This document shows, piece after piece, positions 3,897 to 44,523 of a stretch of DNA of 64,000 nt. A model generated the notes under the pieces. That model did not search any database, was not told where the DNA came from, and worked only from the letters and a program-made list of their open reading frames with translations. The DNA lies in IMG/VR virus record IMGVR_UViG_3300020195_000009, positions 186,001 to 250,000 of that record; one strand, given 5' to 3'. A program made the translations under genes and the position numbers. Position 1 is the stretch's first letter. Every line of letters starts with the position of its first letter.

Positions 3897-3899
3897 ATA

Positions 3900-4027
3900 T
3901 GCCGACAAGTTGTAGAGCTAAGATGGTTTATCTAGGCACCAGCCACGCCCCCCATTGTGGACGTACAGGGAGTTGAACCCTGGTCGATCGATTCATAGTC
4001 GATGTAATCCTAGCAAGTCATCCGGCA
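3900..4027 (-). ncRNA. Y-RNA-like module #1 (cargo: anticodon-like hairpin plus T arm)
   Basis: UGCCGGAUG...AGGAUUACA...CUUGUCGGCA terminal stem; internal aucga-CUAUGAA-ucgau and caggg-UUCAACU-cccug. Confidence 0.65.
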
Positions 4028-4030
4028 CGG

Positions 4031-5528: not shown

Positions 5529-6278
5529 TCATCGGGAGATTTCCCTCATCCCTTGCTGAGCAACCTTCTCAATCCGCTGAGCATCTTCGATCTCTTTGAG
5601 GATTGCCTGAGCTGTCACCACAGGGTCGTTGGCATCCCGGATGGGACGGCCGATGACAACGAGGTCGGCGCCGTCGATGACAGCCCCGCCCGGCGTACCC
5701 GTCCGCCGTTGGTCTCCGACCTCTGCGCCGAGGGGTCGTACTCCGGGAACGAGGTAGAAGGCGTCCGGGTGCTTCGTGTGGAGAGCACCGACTTCCTGTG
5801 GAGAACAGACGAAGCCGCGAAGCCCATGAGAGTACGCAAACGAGGCCAGATTCAAGGCTCGAAGACCGGGATCATACGAGGGCTGAGACCAGGCTCGGGT
5901 GACCAGGCTCGGAAGCATGAGAGCTTCGCAATCCTGCTCCGTCATCGACGTGAGAACGGTCACCCCGAGGAGGGTGATACCGAAGGGCTCCGCCGCCTTG
6001 ACGGCCTCTTCCAGCGTTTTGCGCTGCTGGATGTGGAGCGTCATGTACTTCACCCCGAGGTCCCCACCCGCCTTGACGGCTCGGGTCACAGTCTCCGGGA
6101 TGTCGTGGAGCTTCAAGTCGAGGACGACCGGCTTCTTCGTCAAGGGCATCGCCCCGGAGGCGATGAACATCTCCAGCCCGACCTTGAACGCCCCGACGTG
6201 CTCTTCGAGCCGGTCTACAAAGCCTTGAGCTGTTGAGAGCTTGGGGACATCGAGGGCGAAGCAGATCGGATTGCTCAT
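5529..6278 (-). CDS. pyrF: orotidine-5'-phosphate decarboxylase
   Basis: ALD, FKVG, LDLKLHDIPETV, VTVLTS, PGVRP, VIGRPI motifs. Confidence 0.97.
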   Translation of the reverse strand: MSNPICFALDVPKLSTAQGFVDRLEEHVGAFKVGLEMFIASGAMPLTKKPVVLDLKLHDIPETVTRAVKAGGDLGVKYMTLHIQQRKTLEEAVKAAEPFGITLLGVTVLTSMTEQDCEALMLPSLVTRAWSQPSYDPGLRALNLASFAYSHGLRGFVCSPQEVGALHTKHPDAFYLVPGVRPLGAEVGDQRRTGTPGGAVIDGADLVVIGRPIRDANDPVVTAQAILKEIEDAQRIEKVAQQGMREISR

Positions 6279-7577: not shown

Positions 7578-8204
7578 TCATTTACAGTAGGTGAACACCA
7601 AGTTGAGATAGACATCCGGATCGTACTTCAACTTGTAGTTACGCAGAATTTCAAGACGCCGCTTCAGGTACTCGCAGCGGTAGGCCACATTTGGCGGCAT
7701 CCACTCGGGTGGGGGGCGTGAACCTTTCGACGTGTTCGACTTCACGCTGGCTGCTTGAAGGTGGTGGGGGTTGGCGAGGTCGTTGGCGTAGGCCTTCTTC
7801 TGCTCAAGCGTCCACTGCCACCCGCCCGCCAGATGAGCCTCTTCAAGAGCCACCACATGATCTATTTGGAGGTCGGCCGGATCCGAGAAGGTCATTCCCG
7901 AATAGGGATCGGTCCACTTTCCGGTCAACACCCGACACGGCTTGAGGGGGTCCACGAACGTCACAGGAACCTCGCTCTCATGAACGAGGACCTCTTGGCG
8001 GGTGTCCTGGCAGTCCTTGTCAGCATCGAACCAACGACCCCACTCGTCCCGGTTGTACGGGGGGATCGCCCCGGCGTCTGTAACCAGGGTGGGCGTCCCG
8101 GCATCGACCGTGATCACACCTACCGTTCGCTTCGGCTCCGGGGTCGGCTTGTTGAAGCACGAACACCCAGAGGCGAGAACCAACACGACGCCAAAACAAC
8201 GCAT
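7578..8204 (-). CDS. exported HNH / DUF1524-type nuclease
   Basis: Signal peptide; YNRDEW, CQDTRQEVL, GKWTDPYSG, IDHVVAL, NTSKG..PPEWMP. Confidence 0.88.
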   Translation of the reverse strand: MRCFGVVLVLASGCSCFNKPTPEPKRTVGVITVDAGTPTLVTDAGAIPPYNRDEWGRWFDADKDCQDTRQEVLVHESEVPVTFVDPLKPCRVLTGKWTDPYSGMTFSDPADLQIDHVVALEEAHLAGGWQWTLEQKKAYANDLANPHHLQAASVKSNTSKGSRPPPEWMPPNVAYRCEYLKRRLEILRNYKLKYDPDVYLNLVFTYCK

Positions 8205-8226
8205 CAACCTAAAGTACACCGACTAG

Positions 8227-8506: not shown

Positions 8507-8980
8507 ATGACCAAGACCTGCATCGGGTGCCGGACAGCAAAGGCGCTGGACGACTTCCACCAGAACTCTGCGAAATCAGACGGACGTAGGGACATCTGCA
8601 AGGCATGCGCAAAGTTGTACCACCGCGAGCACTACCTCAAGAACAGGAGCACCTACATCACGAAGAACTCCGAGAGACGAATACGCTGGAAGCTGGAACT
8701 CCGGAGCCGGGTGGCTGCTTTAAAGGACGTACCGTGTGCGGACTGCGGGAACCGTTTTCCAACATGCGTGATGGACTTCGACCATCTCGATGCCGACGAG
8801 AAGATCGATAGCCTTGCCCGCATGCAGGGTAACGGCCTACCTTGGCGAACCGTTATCGCTGAAATTCAAAAGTGTGAGGTGGTTTGCGCAAACTGTCACC
8901 GCCTCCGAACGTGGCGGCGATGGCAGACAGTTGGAGCGGGTGGGGAGAATCGAACTCCCATTACTAGCTTGGAAGGCTAG
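8507..8980 (+). CDS. HNH homing-type endonuclease
   Basis: CxxC...CKAC zinc finger; PCADCG, MDFDH, KCEVVCANCHRLRT. Confidence 0.9.
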   Translation: MTKTCIGCRTAKALDDFHQNSAKSDGRRDICKACAKLYHREHYLKNRSTYITKNSERRIRWKLELRSRVAALKDVPCADCGNRFPTCVMDFDHLDADEKIDSLARMQGNGLPWRTVIAEIQKCEVVCANCHRLRTWRRWQTVGAGGENRTPITSLEG

Positions 8981-10251: not shown

Positions 10252-10258
10252 GAAATTA

Positions 10259-10321
10259 GGTCAACAAGTTGATGCCGAAGTCGTTTCATTTTCGAGATGT
10301 AGACCTCGACGGCATTTGACC
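10259..10321 (-). ncRNA. Y-RNA-like module #2 (minimal)
   Basis: GGUCAAAUG-CCGUCGAGGUC-UACA...GACUUCGGC...CUUGUUGACC. Confidence 0.65.
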
Positions 10322-10323
10322 AG

Positions 10324-12402: not shown

Positions 12403-12771
12403 ATGCAAGCTCTCCTCCCTGTCCTTCAAGACCCACCCGTAAAGCGGGGGGATTGCCTTGCTGGCGGCTCCAACACCCAAAGGCCGTGCCCTTGGGTCTC
12501 CTGCAAGTACCACCTAGCGGTGGAGATCGGCGTAGAGGAAGAGACTGAGAGTTGCACCCTCGACATCGCCGAACGGGGCGGCCTCACGCTGGAGGAGGTT
12601 GGGGACATCATGGGCTTGACCCGTGAGCGCATCCGCCAGATCGAACAGAGAGCCGAGTGGAAGCTCCTCCGGTTGGCAAAGCTTAGACCGGATCTCTTTG
12701 ACGGAACGGACATCGATCCACGAGAAGTGAAGCGTCGTCTGTTCCGAGGTCTTCGCGACTATCAACCTTAG
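12403..12771 (+). CDS. sigma-70 region-4 type HTH protein with Cys/His cluster
   Basis: [12 protein letters not shown]...SCTLD...[22 protein letters not shown]. Confidence 0.88.
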
Positions 12772-12844
12772 TATCCCCGGCAGGAATCGGACCTGCGACA
12801 TTCGCTTTAGGAAAACGACGTTCTATCCACTGAACTACGGGGAC
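12772..12844 (-). tRNA. tRNA-Arg(CCU)
   Basis: tcgtt-tt-CCT-aa-agcga. Confidence 0.9.
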
Positions 12845-12849
12845 AAGTG

Positions 12850-12983
12850 GCGGCAACAAGTGGTCGTAGGGACATTGGGACTAGGGCTCTGCCGACTGAG
12901 CTACCGCCAGGTCTTGCGACCCAACGGGCGGGGCTCGAACCCGCGACCACCAGTTTGATTGTAGTCTCTACTATATTTGCCGC
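12850..12983 (-). ncRNA. Y-RNA-like module #3 (YrlA-like permuted tRNA domain)
   Basis: GCGGCAAAU...GAGACUACA, T arm gcggg-UUCGAGC-cccgc, closed acceptor with GCAA loop, D arm UAGCUCAGUCGGCAGAGC, ...CUUGUUGCCGC. Confidence 0.8.
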
Positions 12984-12987
12984 TTAG

Positions 12988-13061
12988 GGTGACGTACGGG
13001 GATCGAACCCGCCTGAGATTGTTCCACAAACAACCGCCATCACCAGATGGCTAACATCACC
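12988..13061 (-). tRNA. tRNA-His(GUG)
   Basis: gttgt-tt-GTG-ga-acaat, G-1:C73. Confidence 0.9.
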
Positions 13062-13087
13062 ATGAATGAAGCCTCCTTGAGAGGCGG

Positions 13088-13171
13088 CGGAAAGAACTGG
13101 AGTCGAACCAGATGCCTTGCGGCACAATCCGTTTAGCAAACGGTTGAGCGACCACTCACTCTTTACTTTCC
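13088..13171 (-). tRNA. tRNA-Ser(GCU)
   Basis: accgt-tt-GCT-aa-acgga, long variable arm. Confidence 0.88.
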
Positions 13172-13240
13172 TTGGTTTTCAGACCTGAAACTATCACCCA
13201 ACTTGTTCATAGCCGCATCGGTACAACTATAGCCGAACAG

Positions 13241-13325
13241 CGGAGAACGAGGTACTCGAAACCCACACCCTTTCGGGTGCCATTTGCTTTCCAAGCAACG
13301 CTCGCCCCCGGCGAGTTCATTCTCC
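13241..13325 (-). tRNA. tRNA-Ser(GGA)
   Basis: gttgc-tt-GGA-aa-gcaaa, long variable arm. Confidence 0.88.
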
Positions 13326-13330
13326 AACAG

Positions 13331-13415
13331 CGGAAAGAGGTAGAGTCGAACTACTGCGCCTTGCGACGCCTCCGGTTTTCGAGGCCGGTGTCCCACCACT
13401 GAGACTTCACTTTCC
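13331..13415 (-). tRNA. tRNA-Ser(CGA)
   Basis: ccggc-ct-CGA-aa-accgg, long variable arm. Confidence 0.9.
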
Positions 13416-13481
13416 AAGAACTAGCAGATGGGGGGCTTTCCATTACCCACGGCCCGAATTGAACGGGCTCCCCCACCCTCG

Positions 13482-13553
13482 TCGGGGTGACAGGACTCGA
13501 ACCTGCGAAAACTTGGACCCAAACCAAGCGCCCTACCACTAGGCGACACCCCG
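13482..13553 (-). tRNA. tRNA-Pro(UGG)
   Basis: cttgg-tt-TGG-gt-ccaag. Confidence 0.93.
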
Positions 13554-13558
13554 AAATT

Positions 13559-13714
13559 CGTCGTGACAAGTAGTGCGAAGACGGACAGCCTTTCGGCCCC
13601 GGTGCGTATACTCTTCCGCCACTCAGCCATATCAGTAGGCTGAGGAGGGGCGTTACTCCCCCATGTCCTTACGGACGCCGGTTTTCAATGTAGTCCTCAC
13701 GGTCATTCACGACG
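13559..13714 (-). ncRNA. Y-RNA-like module #4 (permuted class-II tRNA-Ser(UGA)-like cargo)
   Basis: CGUCGUGAAUG-ACCGUGAGGACUACA-U-UGA-AA-ACCGG, variable arm, T-like arm, cucagcc-loop-ggcugag, D arm, accgg, ...CUUGUCACGACG. Confidence 0.75.
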
Positions 13715-13715
13715 G

Positions 13716-13800
13716 TGCTCAGAGGGGGAATCGAACCCCCACACCTTTTACGGCGTCGGATCCTGAATCCGATGCGTCTGCCTAGTTCCGCCACCTGAGC
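13716..13800 (-). tRNA. tRNA-Leu(CAG)
   Basis: tcgga-tt-CAG-ga-tccga. Confidence 0.93.
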
Positions 13801-13805
13801 AAGAA

Positions 13806-13908
13806 GAGACGACAAGTGGCCGCGAAGACGTTTTTGCCACCAGACCTTGCGGTCCAGCTCGGGGTCCGAGCCCCAGGCTACCTTGTAGTCCTCACATTCA
13901 TTCGTCTC
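13806..13908 (-). ncRNA. Y-RNA-like module #5
   Basis: GAGACGAAUG-AAUGUGAGGACUACA...CGUCUUCGC...CUUGUCGUCUC with two internal hairpins. Confidence 0.72.
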
Positions 13909-13910
13909 AG

Positions 13911-13993
13911 TGCGATCGGAAGGACTCGAACCTTCAAACCTTTTCAGGCATCAGCACCTCAAGCTGACGTGTTTGCCTTTTCACCACGATCGC
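13911..13993 (-). tRNA. tRNA-Leu(GAG)
   Basis: tcagc-tt-GAG-gt-gctga. Confidence 0.92.
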
Positions 13994-14020
13994 ATGCGTT
14001 CCCAAACGTACTACTGTCAA

Positions 14021-14097
14021 TGGTCGGAGTGAGAGGATTTGAACCTCCAGCCTTTCCGTCCCGAACGGAACGCTCTACCAGGTTGAGCCACACTCCG
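14021..14097 (-). tRNA. tRNA-Pro(CGG)
   Basis: ttccg-tt-CGG-ga-cggaa, CCA. Confidence 0.95.
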
Positions 14098-14116
14098 ATG
14101 TTTCAAAATTCAACAA

Positions 14117-14293
14117 GATCGACAAGGAAACGAGAGTCAAGGGCACCAGCCCATGATACCATCGAAGCCGATGGTGCCCGTGACATCCGTTGTCCCAAAC
14201 CCTCTCGTTTGAAAGGGCTTGGTGACGGCGACGGGGAATCGAACCCCGCGACCTCCTCGTTATGAGCGATGTAGTCCTCACGGTCATTCGTCG
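14117..14293 (-). ncRNA. Y-RNA-like module #6 (cargo: tRNA-Met-like 3' half)
   Basis: CGACGAAUG-ACCGUGAGGACUACA-ucg-CUCAUAA-cga, T arm cgggg-UUCGAUU-ccccg, ...ucacca, ...CUUGUCGA. Confidence 0.65.
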
Positions 14294-14369
14294 TGGTGGG
14301 TCCCCTCGGGATCGAACCGAGTTGTCTGGCTCTTCAGACCAGCGCATTGACCACAATTGCTTGAGACCC
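14294..14369 (-). tRNA. tRNA-Phe(GAA)
   Basis: ctggt-ct-GAA-ga-gccag, CCA. Confidence 0.9.
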
Positions 14370-14384
14370 AGTTGAAAATGTTAG

Positions 14385-14453
14385 CAGGCCGGGAGGGAAT
14401 CGAACCCGTCTTTTGGAGATTTGGAGGCTCCATCGCGTCCTACGCTCCGACCT
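14385..14453 (-). tRNA. tRNA-Trp(CCA), short D arm
   Basis: ggagc-ct-CCA-aa-tctcc. Confidence 0.8.
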
Positions 14454-14721
14454 ATAATTCGTTTTTGAAACCTCTCAATTAAGATGTCCGCAGTAGCCGC
14501 TCTTCAATGCAAAGTCTGCGGTTGGTGGTGGTTTTTTCATGACAACCACCCTAACTCACCGTTCACTTGTAAATGCTGCCTTGAGGGTCGGTCGTTGTGG
14601 GACGACGTTATCGAATGCCCACCTTCGAGCATCCGCCTCAAGACAACCAAGTAATTGGAGCGGACTCCGGCTGTCGGCGGTACCTGGACCGACGGGCTAT
14701 CAACCCTGCCTTCATCCGCAG

Positions 14722-14797: not shown

Positions 14798-14944
14798 GAC
14801 ACCGACAAGAAAATGCTGAGACGTTTTCAGCACGGAGATGGTTCCGCCTTTGGAGGACGGCCACAACCGTAGCCCCCCAGGAAGCTCGGAACGAGGGCTC
14901 CGGGATTCATGGCGGGGGTTGTAGTCCCGACGACATTCGGTGTC
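14798..14944 (-). ncRNA. Y-RNA-like module #7 (contains a Trp-like anticodon hairpin)
   Basis: GACACCGAAUG-UCGUCGGGACUACA...ccguc-CUCCAAA-ggcgg...CGUCUC...CUUGUCGGUGUC. Confidence 0.72.
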
Positions 14945-15099: not shown

Positions 15100-15252
15100 T
15101 GCGACGACAAGGTGACGGAGGAGACGGCCAGCATAGGAGCCCTTCTAAGTGCCGGTCTTGAAGGCTTGCGTCTTCAAGGCGGGATCTGCCCCCGCAAAGC
15201 TCCGGGCCTGGCTTGCCCTTGGTCGATGTAGTCCCTTCCTTCATTCGTCGCA
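15100..15252 (-). ncRNA. Y-RNA-like module #8 (degenerate permuted tRNA cargo)
   Basis: UGCGACGAAUG-AAGGAAGGGACUACA...gcggg-GGCAGAU-cccgc, cuugaag/cuucaag...CGUCUC...CUUGUCGUCGCA. Confidence 0.72.
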
Positions 15253-15253
15253 G

Positions 15254-15318
15254 TGCTTGAGGTTGGAATCGAACCAACTACGCACGGTGCTTCAAACCGT
15301 CGCTCTAGCTACTCAAGC
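15254..15318 (-). tRNA. tRNA-Phe(GAA) with D-loop deletion
   Basis: acggt-tt-GAA-gc-accgt; D region reduced to tagctagagc. Confidence 0.7.
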
Positions 15319-15993: not shown

Positions 15994-16000
15994 GTTGAAA

Positions 16001-16066
16001 TGGGTCAACAAGGGGACGGACGAGACGTCATGAAATGGTATGTAGTCCCGTCCAGCATTTGACCCA
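16001..16066 (-). ncRNA. Y-RNA-like module #9 (minimal)
   Basis: UGGGUCAAAUG-CUGGACGGGACUACA...CGUCUCGUCC...CUUGUUGACCCA. Confidence 0.7.
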
Positions 16067-16109
16067 AACTTACAGACGCACGAGAGCGTCCTGATCTGAC
16101 AGGACGCGG

Positions 16110-44006: not shown

Positions 44007-44375
44007 TTACAGTTCGACCTTCTCGATTACATCGACCCAGTGGTCCTTCGTGGCACCCTTGGTGAAGGCCGACACAACCTCGAACACGGTGTCCGAGAAA
44101 CCACCCACGTTGAGAATGTTACCGTCCTGATCAGGGACCTGAACGGTACTGTGTGGCGTCAAGTCGATGCAGACCAACTTGGCGTTGGGGCAGCGGCGCT
44201 TGAGGATGAGCCACTGCTCCATCATCGCCGTTCCACGACCCCCGGCCCCAATAGGGTGCGCCCAGGACTCGTAGTCGGAGACGAAAACCACGAGGTCTAC
44301 ATGAGCCCGCTCCGCATTGAGAGCCCGGAGCGGCGCATCGCAGTTCGTGGCCCCACCCCGGAACGAAGCGAGCCT
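44007..44375 (-). pseudogene. C-terminal (vWA) remnant of Ro60/TROVE protein
   Basis: GGATNCDAPL..LN...DLVVFVSDYESW...MMEQW..LK.R.PNAKLVCIDL.P....Q...NILNVGGFSD.VF...HWV; the TROVE ring domain is missing. Confidence 0.88.
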
Positions 44376-44523
44376 CGTAGGCCTCCACACGAGCCGGCAG
44401 GTTGCCTTCGATCGGGAAGACCTCCTCCCCGAACTTCGCCGCCGTCTTCCCAATGAGGTAGGCGTGAAGAGCCGAACGAACCTTGGTCTTGAGGTTGGGG
44501 GTTAGTTACATCATAAGGACGAA

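What the first reader, a model, noticed from the sequence alone, without database searches (positions are those of the whole stretch)
13559..13714. Circularly permuted tRNA-Ser(UGA)-like body inside a Y-like stem, while a normal Ser(UGA) gene is absent
Seen: after the conserved UACA come U-UGA-AA-ACCGG, a long variable arm, a T-like arm, acceptor CUCAGCC, a 9-nt loop, GGCUGAG, a D arm and CCGG. This is a class-II tRNA opened at the anticodon loop and joined at the acceptor end. The array has Ser GCU, GGA and CGA nearby but I found no UGA gene. Inference: either a tRNA captured as Y-RNA cargo or decoy, or a permuted precursor that could mature by cleavage and RtcB-type ligation. The degenerate T-loop favours the mimic reading.
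Basis: partly seen in the sequence, partly recalled or inferred. Interest (0 to 1): 0.68.

Follow-up and report, generated by a model that had tools for sequence, protein, structure and literature searches.

The report
Phage Y-like RNA with tRNA-Leu core
This 154-base stretch in a giant phage's tRNA gene cluster encodes a small structured RNA of the known "Y RNA-like" (YrlA) kind, built around a leucine-type tRNA lookalike, and is not a hidden or permuted serine tRNA gene.

Summary
The structure is real. On the minus strand, window 13560-13713 folds into a long closing stem around a four-armed tRNA cloverleaf. The acceptor end is closed by a loop and the anticodon loop is open. Five orthologues from related giant-phage contigs support 41 base pairs, 17 with compensatory changes.

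This layout is the defining architecture of YrlA-type Y RNAs (Chen 2014). At least nine Y-like units are interleaved with the tRNA genes here.

The body is not serine-type. Its D arm matches the arrays' tRNA-Leu genes (19/19 in two orthologues, 15/19 here; best tRNA-Ser 12/19). It usually sits right after a tRNA-Leu gene. "UGA" is one reading of a 6-8-nt linker that varies between orthologues.

Rejoined in silico, four orthologues pass as tRNAs and the window's copy does not. It alone has lost the T-loop/D-loop elbow signature. The phage's Ro60 gene is a remnant, while RtcB is intact. A complete relative keeps an intact unit, has Ro60 and no RtcB, and has its own unusual tRNA-Ser(UGA).

Verdict: a class-II (Leu-type) variant of a known tRNA-mimic Y RNA, missed by Rfam. 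The permuted pre-tRNA reading is unsupported. No expression data could be obtained.

The parts
13560..13713 (-). Whole Y-like unit (154 nt RNA, 5' end at 13713): a closing stem around a class-II tRNA-like cloverleaf
   Evidence: Sequence; fold z = -3.4; five-way covariation
13689..13713 (-). 5' strand of the Y-type stem: outer helix P1 (13707-13713), internal loop with AAUG, inner helix P2 (13693-13700), and the conserved YUAY motif (CUAC, 13690-13693)
   Evidence: A 12-nt block is identical in three units of the array. It corresponds to the 5' module of the Rfam YrlA consensus. P1 is invariant in 4 of 5 orthologues, with one compensatory pair in L140.
13683..13688 (-). Open linker, a remnant of an anticodon loop (6 nt here, 7-8 nt in orthologues). 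This is the source of the 'U-UGA-AA' reading.
   Evidence: Structural table; comparison with the arrays' real anticodon loops
13678..13682 (-). 3' strand of the anticodon-like stem; pairs with 13598-13602 (4 base pairs plus one purine-purine mismatch)
   Evidence: 3 of 5 pairs are compensatory across orthologues
13663..13677 (-). Long variable arm (4-bp stem, 4-nt loop): the class-II feature
   Evidence: 2 of 4 pairs compensatory
13645..13662 (-). T arm: the 5-bp stem is kept, but the loop (13650-13657) is 8 nt and lacks the UUCGA signature
   Evidence: Four orthologues have a canonical 7-nt T loop; only this copy differs
13622..13644 (-). Acceptor-like stem, 7 bp, closed by a 9-nt loop (13629-13637)
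   Evidence: 6 of 7 pairs compensatory. Orthologues have 8-9 bp capped by a UUCG or GNRA tetraloop.
13603..13621 (-). Positions 8-9, D arm (3-bp stem, 10-nt loop) and position 26: a tRNA-Leu-type block, with the first of the two elbow G residues lost
   Evidence: 15/19 identical to the array's tRNA-Leu genes, with the 4 differences in the D loop. 19/19 in the L088 and L125 orthologues. Best tRNA-Ser is 12/19.
13598..13602 (-). 5' strand of the anticodon-like stem
13588..13597 (-). Extra 3-bp hairpin with a GNRA loop, invariant in all five orthologues; role unknown
13554..13587 (-). 3' strand of the Y-type stem (P2 13575-13582, the ACUUGU-type internal loop, P1 13560-13566) and a 6-nt tail reaching the next tRNA
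   Evidence: Matches the 3' module of the Rfam YrlA consensus
13714..13800 (-). tRNA-Leu(CAG), ending one base before the unit. Its 3' processing would create the unit's 5' end.
   Evidence: ARAGORN and Rfam. It is among the tRNAs closest to the unit's body.
13481..13553 (-). tRNA-Pro(UGG), starting 6 nt after the unit's closing stem. RNase P cleavage here would create the unit's 3' end.
   Evidence: No promoter-like site in 12700-14500, and no terminator-like site next to the unit.
44010..44490 (-). Remnant of the phage's Ro60/Rsr gene. Only residues 448-566 (62% identity to the relative's Ro60) and about 40 residues of the middle, in another frame, survive. The ring-forming TROVE part is missing.
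   Evidence: The intact 566-aa orthologue is in relative G001.

Best explanation
The stretch encodes a Y RNA-like small RNA of the YrlA class. A long stem of the type that binds Ro60/Rsr encloses a tRNA mimic. Here the mimic is a whole class-II, leucine-type tRNA body, closed at the acceptor end and opened at the anticodon loop.

Steps shown:
- The fold is conserved and covaries in five related giant-phage contigs.
- The body is tRNA-Leu-like.
- The unit is one of at least nine Y-like units interleaved with the tRNA genes.
- It has no promoter of its own.

Steps inferred:
- It is transcribed with the array.
- It is released by the enzymes that trim the flanking tRNA-Leu and tRNA-Pro.
- Its stem binds a Ro60 protein (the host's here, since the phage copy is broken).
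- Its tRNA-like part engages a tRNA-binding partner, or competes with real tRNAs for one.

The window's copy has specifically lost the T-loop/D-loop elbow that the other four orthologues conserve. So it is an elbow-less, probably weakened or repurposed member. It is not a source of tRNA-Ser(UGA).
For: - **Topology:** identical to the YrlA definition and to the Rfam consensus.
- **Shared modules:** the 5' and 3' stem modules are shared with sister units, which hit Rfam YrlA or YrlB in this array (43.5 and 35.9 bits) and in relatives (up to 57.6 bits).
- **Fold:** z = -3.4.
- **Covariation:** 17 of 41 pairs compensatory, 97% of cells paired.
- **Ro60 in relatives:** the complete relative G001 encodes an intact Ro60 on the same strand as its array. 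Myxococcus phage Mx1, the closest isolated phage by Ro60, has Y-like units inside its tRNA array.
- **Leu identity:** D-arm block 19/19.
- **Elbow:** conserved in four orthologues (0-3 differences in 17 nt) but diverged here (7 of 18, against 19 of 128 elsewhere; Fisher p = 0.02).
- **No independent gene signals:** no credible ORF, and no promoter or terminator of its own.
Against: - Rfam's YrlA model gives no match at this unit even at E = 10, nor at its intact orthologues.
- The 5' GNCGAA-type motif is met only in a variant form with two extra bases.
- Ro60 is not adjacent. It lies about 30 kb away and is broken in this phage.
- No RNA or binding data could be obtained.
- All five orthologues keep U-NGA-AA in the linker, which a plain mimic reading does not explain.
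Confidence: 0.72

Rival explanations
1. Permuted pre-tRNA: the RNA is cut on both sides of the Y-type stem, the anticodon loop is sealed by the phage RtcB ligase, and the acceptor end is opened. This would yield a working tRNA-Ser(UGA) that the array lacks.
For: - The 3' half precedes the 5' half.
- RtcB is intact, about 3 kb beyond the array.
- No Ser(UGA) gene exists in the contig.
- Four orthologous bodies pass ARAGORN once rejoined.
- All five keep U-NGA-AA.
Against: - The window's rejoined body is not called as a tRNA in either register. Its T loop is 8 nt without UUCGA, and one elbow G is lost.
- The body is Leu-type, so a serine triplet would not match it.
- In the normal register the orthologues read GGA, GGA, GAA and GAA. 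In L088 this duplicates a canonical Ser(GGA) gene.
- G001 keeps an intact unit with no RtcB and has its own tRNA-Ser(UGA).
- Orthologue acceptor stems are sealed by stable tetraloops on 8-9 bp.
- No splicing endonuclease is found.
Confidence: 0.03
2. Acceptor-opened two-piece RNA. As in Mycobacterium smegmatis YrlA, RNase P cuts at the 7-bp acceptor-like stem and CCA is added, giving two halves held together by the stems, possibly chargeable. This can coexist with the best explanation.
For: - The window's copy has exactly 7 bp and a 9-nt loop rather than a tetraloop.
- Chen 2014 showed this processing for a 7-bp YrlA.
- Sister units at about 14115-14293, and in L088 and L125, encode ACCA after the acceptor strand.
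Against: - The elbow, which is recognised by many tRNA-binding enzymes, is degenerate in this copy.
- No CCA is encoded here, and the base after the acceptor strand is U.
- Orthologues are tetraloop-capped.
Confidence: 0.1
3. Decaying relic: after the phage lost its Ro60, this unit lost function and is drifting.
For: - The Ro60 gene is a remnant.
- The elbow loops are lost, and the linker is shorter than in the orthologues.
Against: - All stems remain intact, with compensatory changes relative to the closest orthologue. Divergence outside the two loops is only 15%.
- Other tRNA-like units in the same array keep canonical T loops.
Confidence: 0.12
4. Processing spacer: a structured spacer that only guides or paces cleavage of the polycistronic tRNA transcript, with no Ro60 link.
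For: - It fills the whole gap between two tRNAs and has no promoter of its own.
Against: - The stem modules are shared with units that match the YrlA and YrlB models.
- The arrays co-occur with Ro60 in G001 and Mx1.
- A spacer would not need conserved tRNA elbow loops, as the four orthologues have.
Confidence: 0.05

Closest known systems
YrlA, the tRNA-mimicking bacterial/phage Y RNA (Rfam RF02553; Chen et al. 2014, PMC4201824; structure in bioRxiv 10.1101/312249)
   Same: - A long stem with an AAUG-type internal loop, then YUAY, variable region, T arm, loop-closed acceptor-like stem and D arm, and back through a short anticodon-like stem.
- The 3' ACUUGU-type module.
- Occurs in phages that encode Ro60.
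   Different: - The body is class II (15-nt variable arm, 3-bp D stem) and leucine-type.
- Anticodon-loop nucleotides are retained, whereas YrlA is described as lacking the loop.
- An extra invariant hairpin is present.
- The 5' motif has two extra bases.
- It is not next to Ro60.
- The Rfam model does not detect it.
- In this copy the elbow loops, YrlA's most conserved feature, are lost.
Mycobacterium smegmatis YrlA
   Same: A 7-bp acceptor-like stem, the feature that makes that RNA an RNase P substrate with CCA addition in vivo.
   Different: The M. smegmatis RNA has a canonical elbow and sits beside rsr. Processing of the unit here is untested.
Phage Y RNA-like RNAs with phage Ro60 (mycobacteriophages, CcrColossus, Bacillus phage G; Thermus phage phiLo Yrl1/Yrl2, PMC12135203)
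   Same: Phage-encoded Y-like RNAs partnered with a phage Ro60. For phiLo, binding and a complex with host PNPase were shown.
   Different: Those RNAs lie next to the Ro60 gene and number one or two. Here at least nine units are interleaved with tRNA genes, tens of kb from a broken Ro60.
Permuted tRNA genes of the red alga Cyanidioschyzon merolae (from my own knowledge, not tested here)
   Same: The 3' half is encoded before the 5' half, with a linker at the acceptor end.
   Different: Those genes mature through a bulge-helix-bulge site, a splicing endonuclease and a circular intermediate, and yield canonical tRNAs. Here there is no endonuclease and no valid tRNA after rejoining.
tRNA-Leu genes of the same arrays
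   Same: The D-arm block is identical (19/19) in two orthologues. In L125 the anticodon stem and T arm nearly copy the adjacent tRNA-Leu(CAG).
   Different: The order is permuted, the acceptor is closed, there is no A73 or CCA, and there is no leucine anticodon.

Membership tests
YrlA-type Y RNA | Closing stem plus a tRNA-like domain in the order V, T, loop-closed acceptor-like stem, D | tested here: met
   Fold; structural table and covariation; same order as the Rfam consensus
YrlA-type Y RNA | Conserved YUAY just before the variable region | tested here: met
   CUAC at 13690-13693; invariant in all five orthologues
YrlA-type Y RNA | GNCGAAN0-1G near the 5' end (the proposed Ro60 contact) | tested here: not met
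   The unit has a variant with two extra bases before AAUG, found in 4 of 5 orthologues. Sister units at 13806-13908, about 14115-14293 and 15101-15251 carry the exact motif.
YrlA-type Y RNA | Nearly invariant T-loop and D-loop elbow nucleotides | tested here: not met
   The window's copy has an 8-nt T loop without UUCGA and has lost one elbow G. The feature is met in the four orthologues.
YrlA-type Y RNA | Reaches the Rfam RF02553 gathering score (69 bits) | tested here: not met
   No match at E up to 10 at the unit or at its orthologues. Sister units score 25-58 bits.
YrlA-type Y RNA | Encoded within about 4 kb of Ro60/Rsr on the same strand | tested here: not met
   Same strand, but about 30 kb away, and the gene is a remnant. 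In G001 the distance is about 27 kb, with an intact gene.
YrlA-type Y RNA | Bound by Ro60/Rsr | not testable with these tools
   Needs a pull-down.
Permuted tRNA gene | 3' half encoded upstream of the 5' half | tested here: met
Permuted tRNA gene | The rejoined halves make a valid tRNA | tested here: not met
   ARAGORN calls nothing for the window's copy. It-nt tRNAs for the four orthologues.
Permuted tRNA gene | Splicing endonuclease available to cut at the anticodon side | tested here: not met
   PF01974 is absent from the contig, while the controls gave hits. The contig is incomplete, and a formal bulge-helix-bulge search was not done.
Permuted tRNA gene | Circular or anticodon-ligated intermediates | not testable with these tools
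   No reads available
tRNA-Ser(UGA) | D arm of the type used by this phage group's tRNA-Ser genes | tested here: not met
   Best tRNA-Ser match is 12/19, against 15/19 for tRNA-Leu. Orthologues score 11-12 against 16-19.
tRNA-Ser(UGA) | A seven-base anticodon loop with U33 and UGA | tested here: not met
   The linker is 6 nt and open. UGA appears only if a base of the UACA motif is borrowed.
Class-II tRNA-Leu derivative | Leu-type D-arm block and a long variable arm | tested here: met
Class-II tRNA-Leu derivative | A73 discriminator and a leucine anticodon | tested here: not met
   The base after the acceptor strand is U here and C or G in the orthologues. No leucine triplet is present.

The most novel reading that the evidence does not exclude
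The Leu-type unit is a separate, conserved subclass of phage Y RNA. It keeps an entire class-II tRNA, including the anticodon-loop bases (U-NGA-AA in all five orthologues). It acts as bait or competitive inhibitor for host anticodon nucleases or other tRNA-directed defence enzymes, working alongside the phage's tRNA set and either Ro60 or RtcB. It would also be a living intermediate for the proposed origin of Y RNAs from tandem tRNA transcripts.
Probability: 0.2. Interest if true: 0.65.

Novelty: new variant of a known kind. Interest (0 to 1): 0.42.

Why it matters
- **Gap in annotation:** giant phages can carry many Y RNA-like genes hidden between their tRNA genes. In Mx1, one overlaps an annotated "hypothetical protein". 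The curated YrlA model misses a whole class-II subclass.
- **Origin of Y RNAs:** the unit keeps parts of a tRNA that YrlA is described as lacking. It therefore bears directly on the proposal that Y RNAs arose from tRNA dimers.
- **Possible counter-defence role:** Y-like RNAs, a near-complete tRNA set, tmRNA, and either Ro60 or RtcB occur together. This fits the idea that these RNAs belong to a phage answer to host attacks on tRNA. That idea becomes testable in Myxococcus phage Mx1.
- **For the scan itself:** the apparent "missing Ser(UGA) replaced by a permuted gene" is not real.

Tried and rejected
- **Serine identity.** I accepted it until. I rejected it when the D arm and the whole body proved Leu-like.
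- **Private deletion idea.** After I suggested that 'UGA' arose by a private one-base deletion from GGA. I withdrew this when L140 showed a similar linker.
- **Hairpin motif.** The invariant hairpin contains a string that fits GNCGAA. I rejected it as that motif because it is a GNRA loop in the 3' half, not near the 5' end.
- **Rfam at the unit.** Only a spurious 9-bit match.
- **BLAST against isolated phages.** No match, near or distant.
- **First exact-pattern scan.** Nothing.
- **Broad pattern scans.** These gave mostly chance hits. L126, L141, L142, L185 and L188 were examined and discarded. No bacterial genome carries the unit by this pattern, but the pattern's sensitivity is low.
- **ARAGORN at a relaxed threshold on the whole contig.** 430 calls, uninformative.
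- **BLAST of the relative's odd tRNA-Ser(UGA) against this contig.** Nothing.
- **ORF upstream of the Ro60 remnant.** It is not its N-terminus.
- **Sequencing runs.** I did not seek them another way.
- I redid it with segment lengths only.
- **Off-by-one error.** One L140 parse was off by one base and was corrected.
- **Neighbouring proteins.** Pfam on RtcB's neighbours and the ORFs inside the array showed no further RNA-repair genes.

Full report
**Context.** The window is bases 186001-250000 of a 286,005-bp viral contig, judged about 60% complete. The same contig appears in the metagenome collection as Ga0163150_10000022. Its minus strand carries a tmRNA gene and 45 tRNA genes between window 576 and 17829. 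Two more tRNA(CUA) genes lie near 54-55 kb. No tRNAs lie elsewhere on the contig. The finding fills the 160-nt gap between tRNA-Leu(CAG) (13714-13800) and tRNA-Pro(UGG) (13481-13553).

**The observation.** The minimum-energy fold is a long two-part stem that encloses a junction. The junction has a short stem, a long variable arm, a T-like arm, a 7-bp stem closed by a 9-nt loop, a D-like arm and one extra hairpin. The energy is -61.7 kcal/mol, z = -3.4, and none of 200 shuffles folds as well. No credible ORF overlaps it. The surrounding 1.8 kb has no promoter-like site, and no terminator-like site lies next to the unit.

**It is one of a set.** A 12-nt block from the 5' side of the stem occurs three times exactly in the array. 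Folding all mid-sized gaps shows the same frame around different inserts: closing helix, AAUG-type internal loop, inner helix, YUAY, insert, ACUUGU-type loop, closing helix. A strict pattern with a perfect 6-bp closing helix finds six units. Three more are seen by Rfam or inspection, giving at least nine. Rfam scores one as YrlA (12847-12983, 43.5 bits) and one as YrlB (15999-16070, 35.9 bits), both below the curated thresholds. The aligned YrlA consensus has the same order of parts as the finding.

**What is known.** Chen et al. 2014 defined YrlA RNAs by a 5' GNCGAA-type motif, a YUAY before a variable region, a T arm, a loop-closed acceptor-like stem and a D arm. They found them in more than 250 bacteria and 22 phages. 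They also showed that the M. smegmatis RNA, which has a 7-bp acceptor-like stem, is cut by RNase P and receives CCA. The crystal-structure paper states that YrlA lacks an anticodon loop and a free CCA. It says the D/T elbow is the most conserved part and the likely effector site. It also cites a model in which YrlA arose from a tRNA dimer. So the 'permuted tRNA inside a Y-like stem' is the known architecture, not an oddity of this locus.

**Relatives.** Pattern scans of viral and metagenome contigs gave four further distinct orthologues of this particular unit, all in syntenic tRNA arrays:
- L088:3822-3973, from a complete 407-kb phage genome with terminal repeats (handle G001)
- L125:6033-6182
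- L127:5561-5712
- L140:6409-6559

 A structure-based table of the five gives 41 base pairs, 17 with compensatory double changes, and 199 of 205 cells paired. Compensatory pairs occur in every arm: 6 of 7 in the acceptor-like stem. The fold is therefore real and under selection.

**The body is Leu-type, not Ser-type.** ARAGORN names a tRNA only by its anticodon triplet.
- The 19-nt block from position 8 to 26 is 19/19 identical to tRNA-Leu genes of these arrays in the L088 and L125 orthologues. It is 16/19 in L127 and L140.
- In the window it is 15/19, and the four differences are in the D loop. The best tRNA-Ser reaches only 11-12/19.
- Whole rejoined bodies are closer to tRNA-Leu than to tRNA-Ser.
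- The L125 body nearly copies the anticodon stem and T arm of the tRNA-Leu(CAG) just upstream.
- The phages' tRNA-Ser genes have a different, extended D arm.
- The unit directly follows a tRNA-Leu gene in four of the five arrays. In L140 one tRNA intervenes.

**The 'anticodon'.** The linker between UACA and the short stem is 6 nt in the window, 7 nt in three orthologues and 8 nt in L140.
- In the normal register the orthologues read GGA, GGA, GAA and GAA. The window reads UGA only by borrowing a base of UACA.
- Anchored on the 5' side, all five read U-NGA-AA, with N = U, U, C, G, G. I cannot explain this conservation, and five sequences are too few to tell selection from shared descent.
- The linker in the window and L140 is also one base from the Leu(UAA) and Leu(CAA) loops and from the Phe(GAA) loop of these arrays. 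So it carries no clear identity.

**Test of the maturation idea.**
- I rejoined each body in silico, in a script only. ARAGORN-nt tRNAs for all four orthologues, and nothing for the window's copy in either register.
- In L088 the triplet duplicates a canonical Ser(GGA) gene 600 nt away.
- G001 has no RtcB, yet keeps an intact unit. It also has its own unusual tRNA-Ser(UGA) with an encoded CCA, 3.3 kb beyond its tmRNA.
- The window's contig has no such gene. It has an intact 468-aa RtcB about 3 kb beyond the array and no tRNA-splicing endonuclease.
- The orthologues' acceptor-like stems are 8-9 bp capped by UUCG or GNRA tetraloops. This argues for a permanently closed end.

**What is special about the window's copy.** In the four other orthologues the T and D loops are the most conserved parts: 0-3 differences in 17 nt, against 16-33% divergence elsewhere. 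In the window they are the most diverged: 7 of 18 against 19 of 128 when compared with L125 (Fisher p = 0.02). The T loop is 8 nt without UUCGA, and the first elbow G is gone. Meanwhile all stems stay intact through compensatory changes. So constraint on the tRNA elbow was lifted, or reversed, in this copy only. Other tRNA-like units in the same array keep canonical T loops.

**Ro60.** Pfam's TROVE model finds nothing in the contig.
- G001 has a 566-aa Ro60 with TROVE and Ro60-vWA domains on the same strand as its array, about 27 kb upstream of its unit.
- Used as a query, that protein finds only a remnant at the syntenic place here (window 44010-44490). Residues 448-566 match at 62% identity, and about 40 residues of the middle match in another frame. 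Some 212 residues between them are missing, and there is no N-terminus. The phage therefore appears to have lost its own Ro60, unless another copy lies in the missing 40% of the genome.
- The closest Ro60 in an isolated phage is that of Myxococcus phage Mx1 (41% identity). Its tRNA array on the same strand also holds unannotated Y-like units. One of them lies under an annotated hypothetical CDS.

**Mechanism.**
- *Shown:* a conserved, covarying fold with YrlA topology; a Leu-type body; membership in a multi-copy set within a tRNA array; no promoter of its own.
- *Inferred from established tRNA processing:* the RNA is co-transcribed with the array. Its 5' end is made when tRNA-Leu(CAG) is trimmed, and its 3' end when RNase P cuts before tRNA-Pro.
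- *Inferred by homology with YrlA and phage Yrl RNAs:* the stem binds a Ro60 protein, and the cloverleaf engages a tRNA-binding partner. Hughes et al. 2020 suggested that YrlA's tRNA-like domain may competitively inhibit an anticodon nuclease. A survey of jumbo phages places RtcB, other RNA ligases and TROVE proteins among tRNA-repair counter-defences.
- In this phage the elbow-less copy probably binds its partner weakly, binds a different one, or is on the way to being lost.

**Novelty.** The paper searches found no description of a class-II tRNA body in a Y RNA, of retained anticodon-loop bases in one, of many Y-like units interleaved in a phage tRNA array, or of permuted tRNA genes in phages. 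The library is incomplete, so this is not proof. I rate it a new variant of a known kind.

**Limits.** There are only five orthologues. The contig is incomplete. Pattern-based searches find only close relatives.

Noticed in passing
window 13241-13325 (-); L088:4166-4252; G001:C1:82634-82719 (L139:11035-11120): A group of non-canonical tRNA-Ser genes with a 6-bp hairpin D arm and a 3-nt loop, which resembles a tRNA-Sec D arm. The anticodon differs between phages: GGA here, CGA in L088, UGA in G001 (the last followed by CCA). ARAGORN misses them at its default threshold.
   Followed up: partly
window 44010-44490 (-): The phage's Ro60/Rsr gene is a remnant: the C-terminal half of the vWA domain plus a short out-of-frame middle piece. 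The complete relative G001 has an intact 566-aa gene. G001 in turn lacks RtcB, which this phage has.
   Followed up: yes
window 3899-4028, 10252-10322, 12847-12983, 13806-13908, ~14115-14293, 14799-14943, 15101-15251, 16002-16065 (all -): Eight further Y-like units are interleaved with the tRNA genes. Some have tRNA-like bodies. The one at about 14115-14293 has a Met-type anticodon loop, a canonical T loop and an encoded ACCA. Others have no tRNA-like insert or are short (YrlB-like).
   Followed up: partly
window 53885-53962 and 55106-55182 (-): Two tRNA genes with anticodon CUA (amber-suppressor type; ARAGORN labels them Pyl) lie far from the main array. They could point to TAG recoding in part of the genome.
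   Followed up: no
window 15254-15318 (-): A 65-nt tRNA match (Rfam 47.7 bits) that ARAGORN does not call, directly upstream of a Y-like unit.
   Followed up: no
window 5532-6278 (-) and 7581-8219 (-): Protein genes sit inside the tRNA array: an OMP decarboxylase (138 bits) and a protein with a GmrSD C-terminal nuclease domain (26.6 bits).
   Followed up: no
L143:8264-8392 and L143:8616-8719 (Myxococcus phage Mx1, OR576727.2): An isolated, culturable phage has unannotated Y-like units in its tRNA array, upstream of its TROVE gene. One unit lies under an annotated 'hypothetical protein' CDS (locus 8619-8741).
   Followed up: partly
window 13588-13597 (-) and the same place in four orthologues: A 3-bp hairpin with a GNRA loop, between the body and the 3' strand of the stem, has an invariant stem in all five orthologues while the surrounding sequence varies. 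Its role is unknown. It might be a leftover of a second tRNA's variable arm.
   Followed up: no
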